Of a stretch of DNA of 64,000 bases, positions 9,876-49,804 are shown one piece after another; position 1 is the stretch's first letter, and every line of letters starts with the position of its first letter. The notes beneath the pieces were generated by a model, which was given only the letters and a program-made list of their open reading frames with translations, was not told where the DNA came from and did not search any database. The DNA comes from Octopus bimaculoides (Eukaryota). The stretch spans positions 123,380,878 through 123,444,877 of the forward strand of contig NC_068985.1 in NCBI RefSeq assembly GCF_001194135.2, given 5' to 3'. The translations under genes and the position numbers were made by a program.

Positions 9876-9909
<34 letters not shown>

Positions 9910-24610: not shown

Positions 24611-26549
24611 CGCACATATACAAGAAAAATGCAGGGTGGAAGGTAAAATACAGGAAAAATGTGTAAAAATATATAAAGTAATAAAAATATAAAATATATC
24701 TCTATAAATATGTAAAAAAAAATATGTAAGAAATATATAAGAAATATATATAAAAGATATAGAAAGATAAAAAGCTTGTGCGTGGACAATATAAAAAGGA
24801 AGTTCTATCTGTGATCTTGGGGGACCAAAAACATAACAAATATTTAGCTAAATGTGGACATGACCCAAAAAGTTTAGTTCTTAAATTTAGACATGTAGCG
24901 GGTCTAAGTTACTTTTCCAAATGAGCCATCTTTCCATATCACAAAGACCGCACTTTCCACTGCCGTTGGTGTAAGGCTTACACTTGGCTTAGATCTTCCA
25001 ATGGATATTGTAACTGACACCTCTTTCTTTTAAGGAGCATATGTGACTGGATAATTTGGTCGTTTACCTTTTATCCCTGAAGCTCAAGGTGTGATTGTTG
25101 AACCTGGTCTTGAAATGCCCCTCTGTAAGGCCCACATATTTCTTTGTCAAAACTGTGCCCTTAGTAGTCTCGGACATGCAAGCTCCATTTAGAGGGCACA
25201 AATTTTTATCCCTGCATGAACAGCTGGTTTCATTTTGTGGTTTTTGTGTGTTGTGTGCGATTATGGTTTTAAAATTAGTAGTTGAGATGAAACTGATTTT
25301 TAAGTTATGTCTATTGAAGAGTTTTCTGTAACTATGGTTGACTGGAAAATGTCTATCTATCAGTGCTAAGAAACATTTGCCTATATTAAAGGTCACTTCG
25401 GGGGAGTAGGGGTGTGTGAACCAGACGGTTTTCCTATTCCTATGCTTCCTTTTCTTCATTATTGGACTGGTGACAGGTGTATAGGTTATTTCTTCGCTAA
25501 AACCACTATCTTTTAGAGCCTTATTATTTACTGGGGTAACGCTATTAAAAATGTCCATATCGGAGGAGAGTCTAGAAATTATTTTGCTAATGTTTCTAAC
25601 TAAATTTTTAAACACAAGGGGTAGGGGCATGGCAGGAACTCACATTAATATAACTAAGTCTATCGTTGGGCTTCCTGTAAGGTTTATAAATATTCTTATT
25701 TAGATCTAAGGATACACCTAGGAAATTGACAACCGTCAGGTTGGTGTCTGTAGTTATACTAAGACCGAAAGTTTTCATCAGTTGGATAATTTCCTTCCTA
25801 AACCGATCTTGTGCTAGTCCATTGGTATTTGCGGTTAAAACTAGGAATTTTATTATGGCAACCGAATAATTGTCACATTATATTACAAATAAATTCCTCT
25901 ATTTACATAATATCGAGGTCCCTTTCATTCTTTTGTTGTCTTACCATTACTATTAATATATATATATATATATATATANNNNNNNNNNNNNNNNNNNNNN
26001 NNNNNNNNNNNNNNNNNNNNNNNNNNNNNNNNNNNNNNNNNNNNNNNNNNNNNNNNNNNNNNNNNNNNNNNNNNNNNNNNNNNNNNNNNNNNNNNNNNNN
26101 NNNNNNNNNNNNNNNNNNNNNNNNNNNNNNNNNNNNNNNNNNNNNNNNNNNNNNNNNNNNNNNNNNNNNNNNNNNNNNNNNNNNNNNNNNNNNNNNNNNN
26201 NNNNNNNNNNNNNNNNNNNNNNNNNNNNNNNNNNNNNNNNNNNNNNNNNNNNNNNNNNNNNNNNNNNNNNNNNNNNNNNNNNNNNAGGAAAAAAACTTAG
26301 TTTACGATCTATATATGTGATATGTATGTTTTCCCCTTAGTCAGCATATGGGCGCGCCCACGCCTATAATGGCCGGCTCAAGTATGCAATGGTTTCATTT
26401 GATCTTTTTTTTTTCTTAAACAATGCAATTTCCTATTTTTTATGAGAAGAGTTTGGTAGGTTCTTGCTTAATCTGTCTATTTCACCCGGCTTTGGAAACG
26501 GGTGACATAATAATTTGGATTACAATAACAAGGCAGAGAAAGAAGGGGA

Positions 26550-41280: not shown

Positions 41281-43616
41281 TTTACCCAGTGCATCTAAAT
41301 TGTTGGCCTTGTACCAAAATTTGAACTCAATATTGCTTAGAGTGATTGCATACTTACCACTGAATTTGGTAGAGTCAAAGATTCATTATTTGATCATTAC
41401 AGGTGTACCCTGCAGGTTCTTAAGCACTTACAAAATTCCACTCCCACACACACCGAAAGGATTCTTCCCCCCTGATCTACAGGACCACTTGACCTGCTAG
41501 AAATAGTAATATCTCAAATTATAACCCACAGCCATAAAAAGAAACGGAAGGACATATTGTACCTGGAACTTAAAAGACAATCTAAATCACCTAATGCTAT
41601 ATTTATTTCCTTATTCTTTCTTTCACTTGTACATACTATACACAAATATGTCATCCATGAGAGAGAGAGGTGGGAGGCTAAACTAGAAGGTGGCAAAGAG
41701 AGAAAGAGAGCTAGAAATAGAATTACTAAGATAGAGAATGCCAGGTAAATAGAATAGAATACCTTAATGATTCCGCTTTTAAACCACCTATTTTATGTCC
41801 TTTCATCCTTTCCATACATCTCCATCCATATATAATTTTCTCATTCACTCACATTCCCTCTAAATTACCATTCCTGAGATTTTCCTAATTCAAAATCCGT
41901 CTTCATTGCTCCCACACCCTACACACACATTTATTGTTTCACACTCCTCCCACCCGCAACACTTTTCTTACTTGGTCAATGACTCCTTTTTCATTTTCCC
42001 CTTTGTGTACTATTTCTCCTCTTTCTCGTTTTCCCTCTCATTGATTTCAGAATGCATTTCCCTCCTTCTTTCAATCTACCTATTTAATGTCTATCTGTCA
42101 GAGGTGACAAGAATTGCAAGAGTGCAAGTGTATATACATTTGTGTGTGTGTGTGTGTGTGTGCACGTGCGTGCCTGTGTTTGTATGTATGCATGTGCTTG
42201 TCATAGAAAAGCATCGAGAAGAATTCTGAATTATATCAACTGTAAGGTTTCATTTTACATTAACTGAAACCTTTAAAATTATTTAAACACACACACACAC
42301 ACAAACGAGAGTGCATAAACTTGAACGCAGATGCAACTTTCTCTGTGAAGACACACACAATACACGTCTGTATTATACATATGTATAAACACACACACAC
42401 ACAGGGGCAAGAATAATTAGTGAGAATATTCCAGATATAAACATCAGGGCTGTAATTATTTATCCTCACAAATATGGCTATAAATGAGAATCTAATCATT
42501 AAAACAGTAACTCATTTGAGCATCAGACTGCATGTAGGTTTCGTCCTTACTTTCAGGATCAATTGTTATATTAACAATTTATCCATATTTGTTATGTTAT
42601 CAATCTATATTGAGGCTGTGAACAAGTAAAAATAACATGAACTACATTTCTTGCATTTAAAAGAACAAAATAAAATGAACTTAGTACCAGGTCAGTAAAA
42701 AAATATTGGAAAAGTGAGGGAAACACTCAAGAATAAGAGTGGAAGAAATAATGGTGAGAAAAAAAAAAGACAAAGAAAGACTCAGTAAGAAGAAAATAAA
42801 TAATATACAATTGAGACCCATTCAGACAGATTATAGTTTGTTTAGCCCTAGGTTATAACTGATAGAATAGAGATGATCCAAGGTATGCCAGTTAGTATTA
42901 TTAATTTTCCTTCTTAAGGCTGTGAGCTGGTAGAATCGTTAGCATGCCGGCTGAAATGCTTAGCAGCATTTTGTCTGTCTTTACGTTCTGAGTTCAAATT
43001 CCGCCAAGGTTGACTTTGCCTTTCATCCTTTCGGGATCAATAAATTAAGTACTAGTTGCATACTTGGATGGATTAATGTAATCGGCTGGCCCCCTCCCCA
43101 GAAATTTCGGGCCTTCTGCCTAGAATAGAAAAGAAACCGTTAGTATGCTGGACTAAATGCTTAATAGCATTTCATCTGTCATTATATTCTGTGTTCAAAC
43201 TCTACCAAGGTCAAATTTGCCTTTCATCCTTTTGGGGTTTATAAAACAGTACCAGTTGAGCATTGTGATTGATGCTGAAACCAATATTCCTTCCTTCCTA
43301 TTCTAAAAGTGTAGGCTCTGATTTGCAATTTGGCTGCTATATACCCAGGGAGAAGAGTTGAGCAACTACTTGAGAAGAAGAGAGAAGAAACTATGTGAAA
43401 AAAAGAGGTGAGGAAATACAAAACTGTGAAGTGTTGTAAATAGCTTTTCATTTGGGTAATTTAAAATTATTGCATGTAAATTTATTCCAAAACTATGTTT
43501 GCTCAAACATATAAAAATAGATATTTGAATATTTTATAATGAACAATTATATACATACACACATGCATGTTACATACATAAGTGTGTGTGCATATATACC
43601 TACAATAGAAACTGTA

Positions 43617-43730
43617 CAGGGTGTCCACAAAGTCTGGGTACAAGGAGAAAATAAAATCGTAACAGACAATAGAATATAACAAATAATTACTTTTTTTAAT
43701 CCCATGTACCCAGACTTTGTGGACACCCTG
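43617..43730. mobile_element. 114-bp Tc1/mariner MITE
   Basis: Perfect 26-bp TIR cagggtgtccacaaagtctgggtaca; TA on both sides. Confidence 0.93.
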
Positions 43731-43989
43731 TAGAATGTCTCCCAAATTACTTAATAGTGTTTGGTTACATGTCTTTACATTCCAAGTTCAAATCCAGAGT
43801 GTAGACTTTGCTTTTCACCTTCCAAAGGAAATAGGTACGTCTACAAATACAGGGGTTAATATACAGAGCATGCCAATTATTTTTGAACAAACTTTAATGA
43901 GCCATAACTAGCAGATGCCTTAATGTAATCTATTCAGTTCTTTTTCAGTAACAACTTGACAGCTTCAAGTCTGACAAAGAAAATGAAAA

Positions 43990-44198
43990 AGTAAGTCCAT
44001 CTTGGTTCCACTGGTCATATTTCAATGAAATAGCATCAGAAACATTTGAACCATCTTGTTTTTCACATACCTTAAATATTTCAATTTTAGCTTCTCCAGA
44101 CTCGTTATTGTTACCCTAACCCTAACCCTAACCCTCACCCACTTCAGATGATTCTGAAAGTTCTATAGACATCTTGTCATTACACTGGTTGTTATGGT
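43990..44198 (-). pseudogene. Duplicated fragment of the DDX20 last exon with (TTAGGG)3 insertion
   Basis: 44034-44198 matches 46961-47107 at 145/147 nt plus an 18-bp insert that puts three TAG stops in the DDX20 frame; 43990-44001 matches 46953-46964. Confidence 0.9.
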
Positions 44199-44237
44199 GC
44201 TCATATATTAGCTGTAGGCTCATATATACATACTGTG

Positions 44238-44273
<36 letters not shown>

Positions 44274-45338
44274 NNNNNNNNNNNNNNNNNNNNNNNNNNN
44301 NNNNNNNNNNNNNNNNNNNNNNNNNNNNNNNNNNNNNNNNNNNNNNNNNNNNNNNNNNNNNNNNNNNNNNNNNNNNNNNNNNNNNNNNNNNNNNNNNNNN
44401 NNNNNNNNNNNNNNNNNNNNNNNNNNNNNNNNNNNNNNNNNNNNNNNNNNNNNNNNNNNNNNNNNNNNNNNNNNNNNNNNNNNNNNNNNNNNNNNNNNNN
44501 NNNNNNNNNNNNNNNNNNNNNNNNNNNNNNNNNNNNNNNNNNNNNNNATATTAGTTTTAGGGTAAAGAACCAAGGTTCATGAACTCATAGTGTGAAACTT
44601 AATTTAATTTTAATTTTTAATAAATTGAATTTAATTGAGTTTTTACCTGTAAATTTGGATTTTTATCCCTAATAATATTATTATTATTATATATATGACG
44701 ATGATGATGATGATGATATACATATATACTGTGCTCATATATAAGTTGTAGGTTCATATATACTGTGCTCATATATGTAGTTGCTAACCATAATGACTCA
44801 AATCCCCAGGTTTTCGTAAGTGACAAGGACTTTCATTTAGGGTTGGGAAAGAGCTAGAGGCCTCTAGTGAAGAAATATTCTCTATGATGAAGAGAAAAAA
44901 TATTCTCAGCAAGTCAGACATCACCAGGACAATCAAGTTCAACCAGCAGATCCTGGACAACATCAACAATAGCCTCAGTGGATCAATGAAGACTAGTAAC
45001 AAGCAGCTCAAAGTAGCAGAATTTACTACCAGATATAAAGATAGGTAAAAGTCCTACATCGTCAATAAAGCCAACAACCCACAACGTCAAAATTTCAATG
45101 GGGGCTGTTATGGTAGGTTTGATGAGTTGTGAGGAACTCTTCACCATGGCATGAAATCACTTCCATGTCCACAGAGTAAATTTGCTTTGTGTCTTACTTT
45201 TGTACATGGTTACACAATGCATTCTGTATAATTCATGTATTGATTTATATAAAATTTAGAAATTTAATAAACAGACAGAACCAAATATTATTAAACATTT
45301 TGCAAGTAATCAAGACAGAGATGAGAGGAAAAAAATGT

Positions 45339-47494
45339 TTATTTATTCTGCAAAACAGAATTCCTAACCATCCACTGAATGTAGTTGTATTGTTGAAAAT
45401 ATGAATGAGCAAATTGTTGCTGAGTTAATGAAGCAGGTGGAGTTATGAGAGAAGAGTGAAATGGATTTGGAACAGGTAACACAGGTCGTCTTTGTGAAAC
45501 GGACTGACAAGCTTGAGGAACCCAATTGGCCCATGTATACTGATAGGGATATGAGGGATAAAATAAAGGATAACCAGTCAGGGATTGCCATGGAAAACTG
45601 GGGTTGTGACCAGCAGAAGTTTTGTGATGTGGCTCATTTATATTGGAGGATATGGAAGAAAGAGAATCAGAAAAACTATATTCTGCTGGAGAAAAATACT
45701 CAGAGAAGTCTTCTTCTTCTGAATAGGAACTTGAAATATCTGAAGTTGTTGAAGAATCACTGTCCTCACTTAAAGAGAAGTCCTCCTTTAATCGATCAGG
45801 TTGTACATGGACCGAACCAAATTTCAAGTTGTTGCTCTTATTCTTTACAGGAACAGACTTCTGTGGCACATCAATGGACTGAGACCTCAAAGAGCCTGCA
45901 TTGCTTGCTGTCTTTTGATTCTCAGTTTTGAGTTTAGATACGGAATCATTTGGACTAAGTTCACGACTGACTTGATCTCTTTTTAAAGAAACTTGGAATT
46001 TGGCAGAAGTATTGGTTTTCTCAAAGTCTAAATTATAACGTCGTCTTTCACCCTTATTAACCAATGTGTTTGCATCATCAGTAATGCAAACATCTTTGGA
46101 AAGGTTCTCTTCAGCACACTGCACATTTGTCACAGCATTCAGAGGCAACACCACAGCAGATGCTTCTTCACCATCTGATGACAACATTTTTGGCTCTGAG
46201 ATATCATCCTTGTTGTTGACATTGTTCTGATTTTGCAGCTTACTGGAAGAGGTAGCTTGGTTATCACAAATTTCATTCAGCAGTTTGGCTGAAGATTGTC
46301 TGTAAAACTTGTTCAGTATGCCACCTACATTTGGGACTGATTCCAAGCATAAAGGGGCAGTTGTAGGCATAAGAGATTCTATATTTTCACACTTAGGCTC
46401 ATTGTCATTAATTTGGAAAGACTTGAAATTTTTACAAAGTTCAGAATATTCACCAACTTTCTTTGATTTCTTGTACTGAGGAATCGTTCCCCAAGGCCAA
46501 AGGCCATCGACTTGATTGTTCAAAAAGGAGCTTGAGGATTTTTGTGACATAGATGTTTGGTGGTGGTTATTGTCTGATACAAAATCAGCATCTACTGATA
46601 AAACATGGGGAGTACCATTGGTAGCTCTAATACAAGAAACATCTGAAATATGTCCTTCTACAAGAAGTTCATCAGTATTTTCTGTTGATGTTACATAAGT
46701 ATCATGTTTCTCTATGGGACTCCCGACAGCAGTAATTGCTGCAGTAGCAACATGACTGTGTTCTTGTTGGAACTCATTGCTTTCTGTTGGAATGACAGCA
46801 GTTAGATTTCTTTGTGAATGGCACTCATGATGATCTCCTGTATATTTAACAATATCATAGTGTGTCTGTTCATGAAATAGAACATCATTTGCTGATGCAA
46901 TTTTAGGCTCAGGTTTTTGTTCATAACACTCAGTATCATTCAATGTATCTAGAGTAAGTCCATCAGAAACATTCGAACTATCTTGTTTTTCACATACCTT
47001 AAATATTTCAATTTTAGCTTCTCCAGACTCGTTATTGTTACCCTCACCCACTTCAGATGATTCTGAAAGTTCTATAGACATCTTGTCATTACACTGGTTG
47101 TTATGGTTAATAGATCTTCCATGAGTTTCCTCTGTTATTAAGTCTTTATTGGCAGTTTTCTCTGCTTCAAATAAAACTCTACCCGTGGATGCTTCCAAAT
47201 GAACATACCCGGAATTTTGGTCAGAAAAGTAATGTAATTCTTGATCAGAATTTGATTTGATTTCTATTTCTGGAGATGGAAACACTGGATGATTATTAAG
47301 TTTATCGGAATGATTGGAATACTTCACAGGATTGCTTTCTGAGAAATCTTTTACAGATGTTAAAGAAGATTCTGTGTCCAGATTGTTACAATTTCTGTCT
47401 TGTTTGGTTGGAATGGTTTCTGAGAGAACAAGATCATCCAGAGAAACATTTGGAGAAGAGGTCTTTTCCGATATAAGTTCATGTGGTATAGGAT
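45339..47494 (-). CDS. DDX20: DDX20 terminal coding exon (long low-complexity C-terminal tail)
   Basis: 2156 bp open from acceptor ttttag; G|AT completes Asp of LP-DPIP as in DDX20 orthologues; ends in a Y/Q/W-rich motif (HSYFQQYNYIQWMVRN) resembling the Gemin3 C-terminus; stop TAA. Confidence 0.88.
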
Positions 47495-49804
47495 CTAAAA
47501 TAATAATATAATAAAACACAAAGAATAAATCATAGCATAAATATATACATAAGTACAGAAATACATATGCTGTTTTACTCCAACACCCATTTTTTTCACA
47601 CAGACAATCTCAGTTTGACAGACCTCACAATCCTGCATTACCGTATCAACAAGTTCCAGAATAGGGCCCGATGTGGCATTGGTTGAATCAAACACCACAG
47701 ATCTACTATTAAGCATAGTTCTCTGAGGCATTTGAGACATGGCGTCATTAATTATGAAGTCAAACATAAGTGATAAAAGTGCCTGCATCACCATATCAAA
47801 TGTAGGTGATAGGCTCTTCTGCCTTGGTTAGAAACCATCTAGAAATGTTATCTCAATAAAAACAGGAGCTGGTTGGAGGTAAATCTTACATCACACATGA
47901 ATAGTCAAACAAATGAATGTGCTCAGTGAGTGTAACAGTATACAGCTACCTTTCTATGTGTGTCTGCCTATCTTATTACATACATGCATTGCTATATCAG
48001 AAAGTATTCATTAGTGTCTACATATTTGTGAACGTGAGAGTGTTTGAATATTGAACAAACGGGAGGGGGGGGGAAGACAAACAAAAACAAAGATACATAT
48101 AGTGAGACAGATAAAGAAATGGGACAAAAAGGAGAGACAGACAGACTGACAGCATACACACGCATGTGCATGTGTGCATACATGTACTTCTGACAGTTTG
48201 TGTATGTGAAGCCCATGTGCAAATTTTTTGTCTCAAGAAGGCAGATACACATCCAGAGAGACACATATACTCTCTACATCATATATCAGGCTCCAAAACC
48301 ATAAAAAAATAATAGATATTTTCATGGCTGTAGGTGAAGCTGGGAACAACACAGCTGACGTTTCAATACCTGACTACAATACTCAATTTTGTCCAACTAC
48401 TTTTTGGGACCAAATCCCTTGCGATTATACTTTGTTTTACAAATCATATTTTGAGGGTTAAAACTTGCAGAAGACAGTACATTTGGAGTAACCATACACT
48501 TCCTTTATGAATTTGTAAATAATTGCTAATGGAAGAAATTGATATAGGAATGATTCGGTAATCTAATTTTTTCTAGTTAGTCATCCATTACTTCAAACTA
48601 GCAAGTACAATAAAGGTTATACTTTGCTGATGTGATCAGAATAAGGCAGAAAGATGTACAAACTTATCGCTCATATTTTCAAAAAAAAATTTTTTAAAAA
48701 AACAAAAATACTTGTCACTGACTATCATTTTTCCATCATTACATAATTATTTTTTTCCTTTACAGCATGGTAATAATTATATATTTTGATTCTTGTTTCA
48801 TTAAGTTTGTTAACATTAATTTGCCTCCTGTTCTTTATTTTCATGCTAATAGTGTCTGGATTATCTAATCTCCAAATACACTCTTAACCTTAACCAGTTG
48901 TTGTTTAACCCTGAGTAAGCCCTGATTAAGCAAACTTATGATCAAAAGTTTTTATCCTAACTAATGTACTTGTTTTTTTATTATTTCTTTTATCAAACAG
49001 TAAAGTGTTGTTTGAGGTAGATTTTGAGGCTACTTCTAGCAGGTGGAGCAACCACATAGTGTTTCTCTCACTGGTGTATATTTTTAGACCTTTTGCAACT
49101 TTGTAATATGGCAAAGATGAAACGCAAATATAATTTTGAATCACAAAACAACAGCTTGTGAACTTGGTGCTGACGTGACAATTTTTTTTTTAAGAGGGAA
49201 GGACAGCGTTTAAGTTTTTAAGACAAATGGGAAGAGAAGGCATATTCCTCAAACCTCGCCTAAGTCAAGTCTAGTACTCAAACAGTATTATTTTAAAACA
49301 AATTAAGAGCCTAGAGGGAAAAAAGCAGCCAAATTTCTTCCAGATAAAACCCTACAATCTTAAAAAAGGAATGACATATCAGTCCATGTCATCCAGGATA
49401 TAGGAAAAGGTCATTGATGAAATAAATTTGATCATGGATTTGCTTGATCAGGGCTGAATAGAAGCTAGAGTAACAATTCTTCACAGGTAAATTAGGTGAA
49501 GGGTTAGTTAACCCTTGTACTAACATATTTTTGTGAAATATAACTGCATTTGTTGCAACTAATTTCAATAATAATGAAAACTTTAATAAAATAACTGTTA
49601 TTATTAAGCTGGTATTTGGAACATAAATTAACACAAAATTTTGATGGAAGATTTTCATTCAGATCGCTTTAAAACGAGAAATTTGTATCATAGAACCAGA
49701 AGATAATTCAGACAGGTTAGAATAAAAATAAATAACCATTAGTTATACCAGTTTGTGAATTATCTCCCCTAATGTCATTGTCAAAATAATTGGAATAATT
49801 TTAA

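What the first reader, a model, noticed from the sequence alone, without database searches (positions are those of the whole stretch)
44034..44198. Telomere repeats inserted in register into a recent duplicate of a DDX20 exon fragment
Seen: 147 bp of the DDX20 last exon (46961-47107) is duplicated in direct orientation about 2.9 kb away with only 2 substitutions. The copy carries (AACCCT)3 at 44118-44135. On the G strand the parent reads GAGGGT|AAC and the copy reads GAGGGT|TAGGGTTAGGGTTAGGGT|AAC. The AACCCT unit is absent from the parent, so slippage alone would give TACCCT or ACCCTC units. Known: TTAGGG is the molluscan telomere repeat, and short in-register TTAGGG insertions are the described signature of telomerase acting at double-strand breaks in mammalian interstitial telomeric sites. 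Inference: a telomerase-healed break with the pre-insertion state preserved next door, which is rarely visible in an invertebrate.
Basis: partly seen in the sequence, partly recalled or inferred. Interest (0 to 1): 0.78.

Follow-up and report, generated by a model that had tools for sequence, protein, structure and literature searches.

The report
Telomere-repeat scar in copied exon patch
A roughly 190-base piece of the octopus DDX20 gene was pasted 2.9 kb downstream during DNA break repair and carries three telomere repeats at its most telomere-like spot, a repair scar well documented in mammals and here seen in a mollusc with the untouched site preserved nearby and in related species.

Summary
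Window 44034-44198 copies 46961-47107, part of the last exon of Octopus bimaculoides DDX20 on the minus strand. There are 2 substitutions plus an exact 18-nt (TTAGGG)3 insertion.

The copy is larger than reported, at 43991-44198. It keeps a 36-nt stretch that O. sinensis, O. vulgaris, another octopod and Argonauta all have, but that the O. bimaculoides gene has since lost as an in-frame deletion of 12 residues.

No outgroup has the telomeric insertion, and the two sister species lack the whole patch. Both are therefore derived in the O. bimaculoides lineage.

The patch junctions show 2-4 nt of microhomology, about 4 nt lost, no target-site duplication and no poly(A). That is a templated break-repair patch.

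The hexamers sit at the best telomerase-primer-like 3' end among 360 possible ends in the patch (GGGTGAGGGT, 5 nt in register). This matches the vertebrate model of short interstitial telomeric sequences. Telomerase involvement is inferred, not shown.

The two scars may come from one repair episode or from two. Read-level support could not be checked, because the only other assembly uses the same contigs.

Verdict: a real, non-functional scar and a new member of a known kind.

The parts
43991..44198 (-). Templated patch: a copy of a DDX20 last-exon fragment, 190 templated nt plus 18 telomeric nt. It is non-coding, because the insertion puts three in-frame TAG codons into the DDX20 frame.
   Evidence: It aligns to the parent and, over its full length, to the O. 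sinensis and O. vulgaris exon. It shares 7 O. bimaculoides-specific substitutions with the parent.
44118..44135 (-). (TTAGGG)3 insertion, written as (AACCCT)3 on the + strand. Exactly 18 nt. Placement is ambiguous over 5 nt: 44113-44117 is equivalent to 44131-44135.
   Evidence: It is absent from the parent and from all four outgroups.
44131..44140 (-). Telomere-like seed GGGTGAGGGT immediately 5' of the insertion on the G strand. It has 5 nt perfectly in register, and 9 of 10 overall.
   Evidence: It is the single best in-register 3' end among 360 possible ends in the patch. Only 0.37% of ends across the window reach 5 nt or more.
44002..44037 (-). 36-nt ancestral exon segment, encoding AISLKYDQWNQD. 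It is kept in the patch but deleted from the present O. bimaculoides gene.
43990..43993 (.). Downstream junction of the patch (3' end in gene orientation). Microhomology is 2-4 nt (A)GTA with the pre-insertion sequence, which is inferred from the sister species.
44197..44198 (.). Upstream junction of the patch (5' end in gene orientation). Microhomology is 2 nt, GT on the + strand or AC in gene orientation, with the local unit ACTGTGCTCATATAT.
46954..47107 (-). Parent (donor) segment in the DDX20 last exon. The empty insertion site lies between 47044 and 47045, the seed at 47040-47049, and the 36-nt deletion junction within catc at 46961-46964.
45339..47495 (-). DDX20 last coding exon, covering residues of about 402 to 1119 and the stop codon.
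44199..44768 (.). O. bimaculoides-specific low-complexity block next to the patch. It contains two direct repeats of about 50 nt (44197-44246 and 44728-44776), (AT)n, the 274-N assembly gap at 44274-44547, (ATG)n and (ATT)n runs, and about 130 nt of unique A/T-rich DNA. It is absent in O. sinensis and O. vulgaris, which have a single ACTGCACTCATATAT unit here.

Best explanation

Step 1 (shown by comparison). A break occurred in the AT-rich microsatellite region about 1.1 kb downstream of the DDX20 stop codon. It was patched with about 190 nt copied from the DDX20 last exon 2.9 kb away. The junctions have 2-4 nt of microhomology, about 4 nt of target were lost, and there is no target-site duplication and no poly(A).

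Step 2 (inferred). A 3' end terminating in ...GGGTGAGGGT paired with the telomerase RNA template through AGGGT. Telomerase added three TTAGGG units, and the strand was rejoined or re-annealed in register, again through AGGGT, with no base lost.

I lean about 55:45 towards both steps belonging to one repair episode. In that reading the nascent sense strand was primed from the ...GAGCAC-3' break end on the antisense DNA strand of the exon. It dissociated after 68 nt at the seed, was extended by telomerase, re-annealed and was completed. The alternative is a second, clean break in the finished patch.

Strand logic excludes one variant. The G-rich repeats lie on the sense strand, so a single reverse transcriptase copying DDX20 mRNA and then the telomerase RNA cannot have made one continuous strand.

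After the duplication the donor exon lost 36 nt in frame between GATG repeats, so the patch is now a fossil of the older exon. No function is predicted for the patch or the repeats.
For: - Patch and insertion are present as described.
- Polarity. The O. sinensis and O. vulgaris exon DNA, and the proteins of two further octopods, read ...EVGEGNNN... with no insertion and keep the 12-residue segment.
- The patch shares 7 O. bimaculoides-derived substitutions with the parent, so it arose late in that lineage.
- The sister species lack the entire 43994-44768 block. L003 47432 and 47440 are nearly adjacent.
- Junction anatomy fits class-2 templated sequence insertions as described in PMC5110952. 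That paper also reports (TTAGGG)n patches at I-SceI breaks.
- The insertion sits at the one best telomere-register end out of 360 in the patch, and the window-wide frequency of such ends is 0.37%.
- Clean insertions (17% of loci) and 5 or more in-register nucleotides (5% observed against 0.16% expected) are documented for vertebrate short interstitial telomeric sequences (PMC7215372; PMC2246262).
- Telomeric sequence insertion at breaks requires telomerase activity in human cells (PMC5388398).
- Only one run of three or more TTAGGG units occurs in about 205 kb. It falls inside the only templated patch seen, which favours linkage of the two scars.
Against: - Telomerase involvement is inferred from register alone. 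The same 5-nt microhomology on both sides would also guide a template switch.
- The telomere motif of O. bimaculoides itself was not verified here. The only evidence is FISH in Amphioctopus areolatus, via PMC13218726 and PMC6160780.
- No independent reads or assembly could be obtained. GCA_001194135.2 has the same contigs and the same 274-N gap, and look-ups of patch-specific ORFs found nothing.
- The patch lies 75 nt from a contig end.
- The single-episode reading rests on parsimony and could be inflated by how the window came to be flagged.
Confidence: 0.62

Rival explanations
1. The repair scar is the same, but without telomerase. The repair polymerase (Pol theta-type end joining or microhomology-mediated break-induced replication, or a reverse transcriptase copying TERRA) switched template at AGGGT to telomeric DNA or RNA, copied 18 nt and switched back. 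Alternatively, a short telomeric DNA fragment was captured.
For: There is 5 nt of microhomology (AGGGT) on both sides of the insertion. The patch sits in a block that looks like a chain of templated pieces, with 50-nt local direct repeats, microsatellites and a unique insert. Authors of the vertebrate work also mention alternatives to telomerase (PMC7215372; PMC5110952).
Against: It needs two precise switches to an unlinked template and back to the exact next base. Capture of a free fragment would not be expected to land in register on both sides with no base lost or added. Experimental telomeric insertions at breaks depend on telomerase (PMC5388398).
Confidence: 0.2
2. Ordinary microsatellite birth. 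A duplication of the native AGGGTA or GAGGGT unit, a point mutation creating AGGGTT, then slippage expansion.
For: The ancestral site is already telomere-like, with GGGTGAGGGT matching 9 of 10. Hexamer arrays can expand by slippage.
Against: The ancestral sequence contains no TTAGGG unit in the parent or in any outgroup. At least one duplication, one specific substitution and one or two expansions would be needed, in a patch that has accumulated only about 3 substitutions in 187 nt. Yet the three units are perfect and the flanking GGGTGA and GGGTAA are unchanged.
Confidence: 0.04
3. Assembly artefact. The 'copy' is a divergent allele or mis-walked gap closure of the exon, placed next to the 44274 gap, so the duplicate does not exist at this position.
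For: The patch lies 75 nt from a contig end that stops in (AT)n. About 50 nt of direct repeat flank the gap, which can signal a false duplication. The second assembly is not independent. From my own knowledge, the O. bimaculoides reference is a short-read assembly.
Against: The patch cannot be re-used parent reads. It carries 36 nt that the parent lacks, 18 nt of hexamers and private substitutions. Its junctions share only 2-4 nt with the flanks, too little for a k-mer graph to join falsely. The downstream junction lies inside a 7.6-kb contig that is collinear with the sister species. As an allele of the gene it would put three stop codons into an essential helicase. Even in this scenario the telomeric insertion would still be real.
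Confidence: 0.08

Closest known systems
Short interstitial telomeric sequences inserted at double-strand breaks in primates, rodents and horse (Nergadze et al. 2004, 2007, PMC2246262; Santagostino et al. 2020, PMC7215372)
   Same: Exact TTAGGG units appear suddenly at a site that is empty in relatives. The insertion is clean, with no flank modification. Nucleotides are in register with the repeats at the 3' end of the inferred break. The sequence is neutral and non-coding.
   Different: The host is a mollusc. In the literature I could search, all sequence-level empty-site analyses were in vertebrates. The empty state is preserved in a paralogous donor 2.9 kb away as well as in orthologues. The target is itself a young repair patch. 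The array has only 3 units.
Class-2 templated sequence insertions (Onozawa et al. 2014, 2015; review PMC5110952)
   Same: A stretch of about 190 nt was copied from elsewhere with the donor retained. Junctions show microhomology and a microdeletion, with no target-site duplication and no poly(A). That work also recorded telomere-repeat patches at induced breaks.
   Different: The donor is only 2.9 kb away on the same strand, whereas the human cases are mostly distant and thought to be RNA-derived. An RNA intermediate cannot be tested here, because the patch lies within one exon. If the hexamers were added to the same nascent strand, an mRNA template is excluded.
De novo telomere addition (chromosome healing, neotelomeres)
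   Same: Telomerase is primed by a short G-rich, TG-rich or telomere-like 3' end at a break.
   Different: Both flanks are retained and only 18 nt were added. The chromosome was not truncated or capped.
Pol theta-mediated end joining and microhomology-mediated break-induced replication with templated insertions
   Same: Microhomology junctions, locally templated filler, and a possible chain of several templated pieces in the 0.8-kb block.
   Different: Typical Pol theta filler is tens of nt, and here it is about 190 nt. Enzyme identity cannot be tested from sequence.

Membership tests
Short interstitial telomeric sequence inserted at a break (Nergadze type) | Tandem exact telomeric hexamers at an internal chromosomal site | tested here: met
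   (TTAGGG)3 at 44118-44135, with 3.8 units counting the in-register flank. The locus is 1.5-4 Mb from the chromosome ends in the chromosome-scale assemblies.
Short interstitial telomeric sequence inserted at a break (Nergadze type) | Sudden appearance: related sequences show an empty site with no pre-existing repeat units | tested here: met
   The parent exon and the O. sinensis and O. vulgaris exon DNA read GTGAGGGTAAC. Proteins of two further octopods lack it.
Short interstitial telomeric sequence inserted at a break (Nergadze type) | Nucleotides in register with the repeats at the 3' end of the ancestral break site | tested here: met
   5 nt (AGGGT), or 9 of 10 for GGGTGAGGGT. It is the best of 360 ends in the patch, and 0.37% of ends window-wide reach this.
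Short interstitial telomeric sequence inserted at a break (Nergadze type) | The inserted motif is the species' own telomere repeat | not testable with these tools
   No chromosome ends of O. bimaculoides could be read. The literature offers FISH evidence for TTAGGG in Amphioctopus areolatus only.
Short interstitial telomeric sequence inserted at a break (Nergadze type) | Dependence on telomerase, or co-inserted telomerase RNA sequence | not testable with these tools
   The octopus telomerase RNA is not available here. No extra nucleotides accompany the hexamers.
Class-2 templated sequence insertion | Inserted sequence templated from another locus, with the donor retained | tested here: met
   The donor at 46954-47107 is retained, and the patch is absent at the orthologous position in two sister species.
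Class-2 templated sequence insertion | End-joining features at the junctions (microhomology, microdeletion), with no target-site duplication and no poly(A) | tested here: met
   Microhomology of 2-4 nt and 2 nt, with about 4 nt (CACT) missing relative to the sister sequence. There is no duplication of the target and no A-tract beyond the native GAAAAA. The pre-insertion state is inferred from sister species, not from an O. bimaculoides allele.
Class-2 templated sequence insertion | RNA intermediate | not testable with these tools
   The patch lies within a single exon, so there is no splice junction to inspect.
De novo telomere addition (chromosome healing) | Terminal array capping a truncated chromosome, with distal sequence lost | tested here: not met
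   The sequence continues in register on both sides of the 18 nt.
Slippage-born microsatellite | Ancestral proto-repeat of the same unit that expands stepwise | tested here: not met
   No TTAGGG unit in any phase is present in the ancestral GGGTGAGGGTAAC.

The most novel reading that the evidence does not exclude
Both scars are one event. During synthesis-dependent patch repair of a germline break, the nascent strand dissociated from its donor exactly where it ended in a telomere-like seed. It was briefly extended by telomerase, then re-annealed to the same donor through the newly made AGGGT and finished copying. That would be a natural record of telomerase intruding on an ongoing templated repair reaction, in an invertebrate, with donor, product and empty orthologous sites all available.
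Probability: 0.33. Interest if true: 0.6.

Novelty: new member of a known kind. Interest (0 to 1): 0.4.

Why it matters
Short telomeric insertions at break sites have been worked out at sequence level in vertebrates. This locus suggests the same footprint exists in a cephalopod: clean insertion, an in-register seed, and an empty ancestral site.

The configuration is unusually informative. The donor paralogue, two orthologous empty sites and the target all align base for base.

It gives a concrete template for a genome-wide census in molluscs. It also raises a testable question: can telomerase act on intermediates of templated patch repair?

As a by-product, it shows that the O. bimaculoides DDX20 reference has lost 12 residues that are conserved in other octopods.

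It remains one neutral locus with no predicted function, so its value is as an example and a lead.

Tried and rejected
1. Independent support for the patch.
- Look-ups of isoform X2 proteins failed. Isoform X1 and other cluster members worked.
- The O. bimaculoides v2 locus has identical contigs and the same gap, so it is not independent.
- Three ORFs spanning the junction or the hexamers, or lying next to the patch, are not on record in any assembly collection.

2. Transposable-element origin of the patch or block.
- The unique part of the block, 44548-44730, has no other copy in the window or in the three loci.
- There is no target-site duplication, no poly(A) and no terminal repeat around the patch.
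- Rfam finds nothing in the window.

3. Tandem duplication of about 2.9 kb followed by a 2.7 kb deletion. This needs two large events and does not explain the block between the parent and the patch. I rejected it in favour of a templated patch.

4. An mRNA-templated patch with hexamers made by the same reverse transcriptase. The polarity is wrong, because the G strand is the sense strand.

5. A first gapped alignment suggested diverged homology left of 44034. Comparison with the orthologues showed that this region is instead the 36-nt ancestral segment.

6. A second, 2-unit CCCTAA run lies upstream of the gene at L001 7978, outside the window. No orthologous alignment was found, so it is uninformative.

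7. A 15-nt inverted match between the hexamers and 44551-44565 across the gap (I15). I judged it to be chance, since it involves a single TTAGGGTAA.

Full report
**Observation**

The window is Octopus bimaculoides DNA. The long minus-strand ORF at 45339-47519 is the C-terminal exon of XP_014775615.1, annotated as probable ATP-dependent RNA helicase DDX20, with DEAD and Helicase_C domains encoded upstream. The coding part of the exon starts near 47495. The parent segment encodes residues 532-579.

Self-comparison confirms the duplicate. Window 44034-44198 matches 46961-47107 in direct orientation (E=3e-46), with 145 of 147 shared positions identical and one 18-nt gap. In the copy the gap is filled by aaccct x3 at exactly 44118-44135.

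On the G strand the parent reads GGGTGAGGGT|AAC. The copy reads GGGTGAGGGT|TAGGGTTAGGGTTAGGGT|AAC, and the placement is ambiguous over the 5 nt AGGGT.

It is the only run of three or more TTAGGG units in about 205 kb of octopus sequence that I could examine.

I fetched the orthologous loci of O. sinensis (L002) and O. vulgaris (L003), and the chromosome-scale O. bimaculoides record (L001). Three things follow.

1. The copy is longer than reported. It aligns to the sister-species exon over 43992-44196. That span includes a 36-nt stretch (44002-44037) present in O. sinensis and O. vulgaris but absent from the O. bimaculoides parent.
   - At protein level the 12 residues (D/A)ISLKYDQWNQ are present in O. 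sinensis, O. vulgaris, an unnamed octopod from a Logan assembly and, in diverged form, Argonauta hians.
   - So the present O. bimaculoides gene has an in-frame deletion between GATG repeats, and the copy preserves the older state.

2. None of the outgroups has the hexamers. All read ...EVGEGNNN... or a close variant. The insertion is therefore derived in the copy.

3. The copy shares 7 O. bimaculoides-specific substitutions with the parent. It has about 3 private ones, and the parent has 1. It arose late in the O. bimaculoides lineage.

**Context**

The sister species lack the whole of 43994-44768. L003 47432 and 47440 are nearly adjacent.

Where they read GAAAAC-GTACACTGCACTCATATAT-CTTGTTGCTAACC on the + strand, O. 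bimaculoides has, in order:
- the flank GAAAAA;
- the patch;
- a repeat of about 50 nt;
- (AT)n;
- the 274-N gap;
- about 130 nt of unique A/T-rich DNA;
- (ATT)n and (ATG)n;
- a second copy of the 50-nt repeat;
- GTAGTTGCTAACC.

The patch junctions show 2-4 nt ((A)GTA) and 2 nt (GT) of microhomology. About 4 nt (CACT) of target are missing. There is no target-site duplication and no poly(A).

This is the anatomy of a templated break-repair patch, the class-2 templated sequence insertion of PMC5110952. It sits at the edge of an unstable microsatellite region.

In the DDX20 frame the hexamers introduce three TAG stops. The patch is non-coding, and I predict no function.

**Is it an artefact?**

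I could not obtain independent reads. L001 has the same contigs and the same gap. Patch-specific ORFs are not on record elsewhere. The patch lies 75 nt from a contig end.

Internal evidence argues that the sequence is real:
- It carries 36 nt, 18 nt and private substitutions that parent reads could not supply.
- Its junctions share too few bases with the flanks for a graph assembler to create them.
- Its downstream junction lies inside a 7.6-kb contig that is collinear with the sister species.
- As an allele of the gene it would truncate an essential helicase.

I give about 8% to misplacement. Even then the hexamer insertion would be genuine.

**Mechanism of the hexamer insertion**

The ancestral site contains no TTAGGG unit in any phase. 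Slippage would therefore need a duplication, a specific substitution and further expansions, within a patch that has only about 3 substitutions. Yet the units are perfect.

The insertion site is strikingly non-random. Of 360 possible 3' ends on the two strands of the 191-nt pre-insertion patch, it is the single one with 5 nt in register with the telomere repeat. It has 9 of 10 if GGGTGAGGGT is counted. Window-wide, only 0.37% of ends reach 5 nt.

This is the criterion used in vertebrates to implicate telomerase. There, 75-80% of species-specific short interstitial telomeric sequences have in-register nucleotides. Five or more occur in 5% of loci against 0.16% expected, and 17% of insertions are clean (PMC2246262; PMC7215372). 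In human cells, telomeric sequence insertion at breaks requires telomerase activity (PMC5388398).

I therefore take telomerase extension of a ...GGGTGAGGGT-3' end as the most likely source (about 0.6). A non-telomerase template switch or fragment capture guided by the same microhomology is the main rival (about 0.2).

**One episode or two?**

The alternative is one episode, which would run as follows:
1. The break end ...GAGCAC-3' anneals by AC to the antisense strand of the exon.
2. It copies 68 nt and dissociates at the seed.
3. Telomerase extends it by three repeats.
4. It re-anneals through AGGGT and copies 123 nt more.
5. It joins the other end through AC(T).

The evidence for this is that two rare repair footprints coincide in the same 190 nt, and that the only such hexamer run in about 205 kb lies in the only patch. 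That favours linkage. How the window came to be selected weakens the argument, so I put it at about 55:45.

Strand polarity gives one firm exclusion. The G-rich repeats are on the sense strand, so a single reverse transcriptase copying DDX20 mRNA and then the telomerase RNA cannot have made one continuous strand.

**Comparison with what is known, and novelty**

The locus meets the testable defining features of Nergadze-type short interstitial telomeric sequences and of class-2 templated insertions. It fails those of chromosome healing and of slippage-born microsatellites.

Three things were not testable here: the species' own telomere motif, telomerase dependence, and an RNA intermediate. On the motif, the literature offers only FISH in Amphioctopus areolatus, via PMC13218726 and PMC6160780.

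In the literature I could search, sequence-level empty-site analyses are all in vertebrates. I therefore file this as a new member of a known kind. It is a clean and unusually well-documented example in a mollusc, of moderate interest, and it prompts a genome-wide census and a specific mechanistic question.

Noticed in passing
window 46961-46964 (deletion junction); retained copy of the lost segment at 44002-44037: The O. bimaculoides DDX20 reference lacks 36 nt (12 residues, (D/A)ISLKYDQWNQ, between residues 575 and 576). These residues are present in O. sinensis, O. vulgaris, another octopod and, in diverged form, Argonauta. The deletion is in frame and lies between GATG microhomologies. Whether it is fixed, polymorphic or an assembly collapse is unknown.
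   Followed up: yes
window 44197-44246 and 44728-44776, flanking the gap at 44274-44547: Two direct repeats of about 50 nt (86-91% identical), built from the local unit ACTGTGCTCATATAT, bracket (AT)n, the assembly gap and about 130 nt of unique A/T-rich DNA. The whole block is absent in the sister species. It could be a chain of templated repair pieces, a tandem duplication or partly a false duplication around the gap.
   Followed up: partly
window 43617-43730 (TA at 43615-43616 and 43731-43732): An O. bimaculoides-specific 114-nt element with terminal inverted repeats of about 25-50 nt (CAGGGTGTCCACAAAGTCTGGGTAC...), flanked by a duplicated TA. O. sinensis and O. vulgaris have the empty site ATTCTACAGTTTC. 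It looks like a Tc1/mariner-type miniature inverted-repeat element, 260 nt from the patch.
   Followed up: partly
window 9877-9909, 25951-25978, 44241-44273: Three of the six assembly gaps (9910, 25979, 44274) begin directly after an (AT)n run. Contigs in this assembly tend to end in AT microsatellites.
   Followed up: no
window 45339-45350, minus strand: The DDX20 stop codon is embedded in AATAAATAA, so a canonical AATAAA signal overlaps the last codons. If it is used, the 3' UTR is very short and the patch, 1.1 kb further on, would lie outside the transcript.
   Followed up: no
L001 7978-7989 (upstream of DDX20, outside the window): A two-unit CCCTAACCCTAA run in O. bimaculoides. No orthologous alignment was found in the O. 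sinensis or O. vulgaris loci, so its origin could not be judged.
   Followed up: partly
L001 and L003 record coordinates: The DDX20 locus lies about 4 Mb from one end of the 127.5-Mb O. bimaculoides chromosome record, and about 1.5 Mb from the end of the 147.5-Mb O. vulgaris record. It is distal but not subtelomeric.
   Followed up: no
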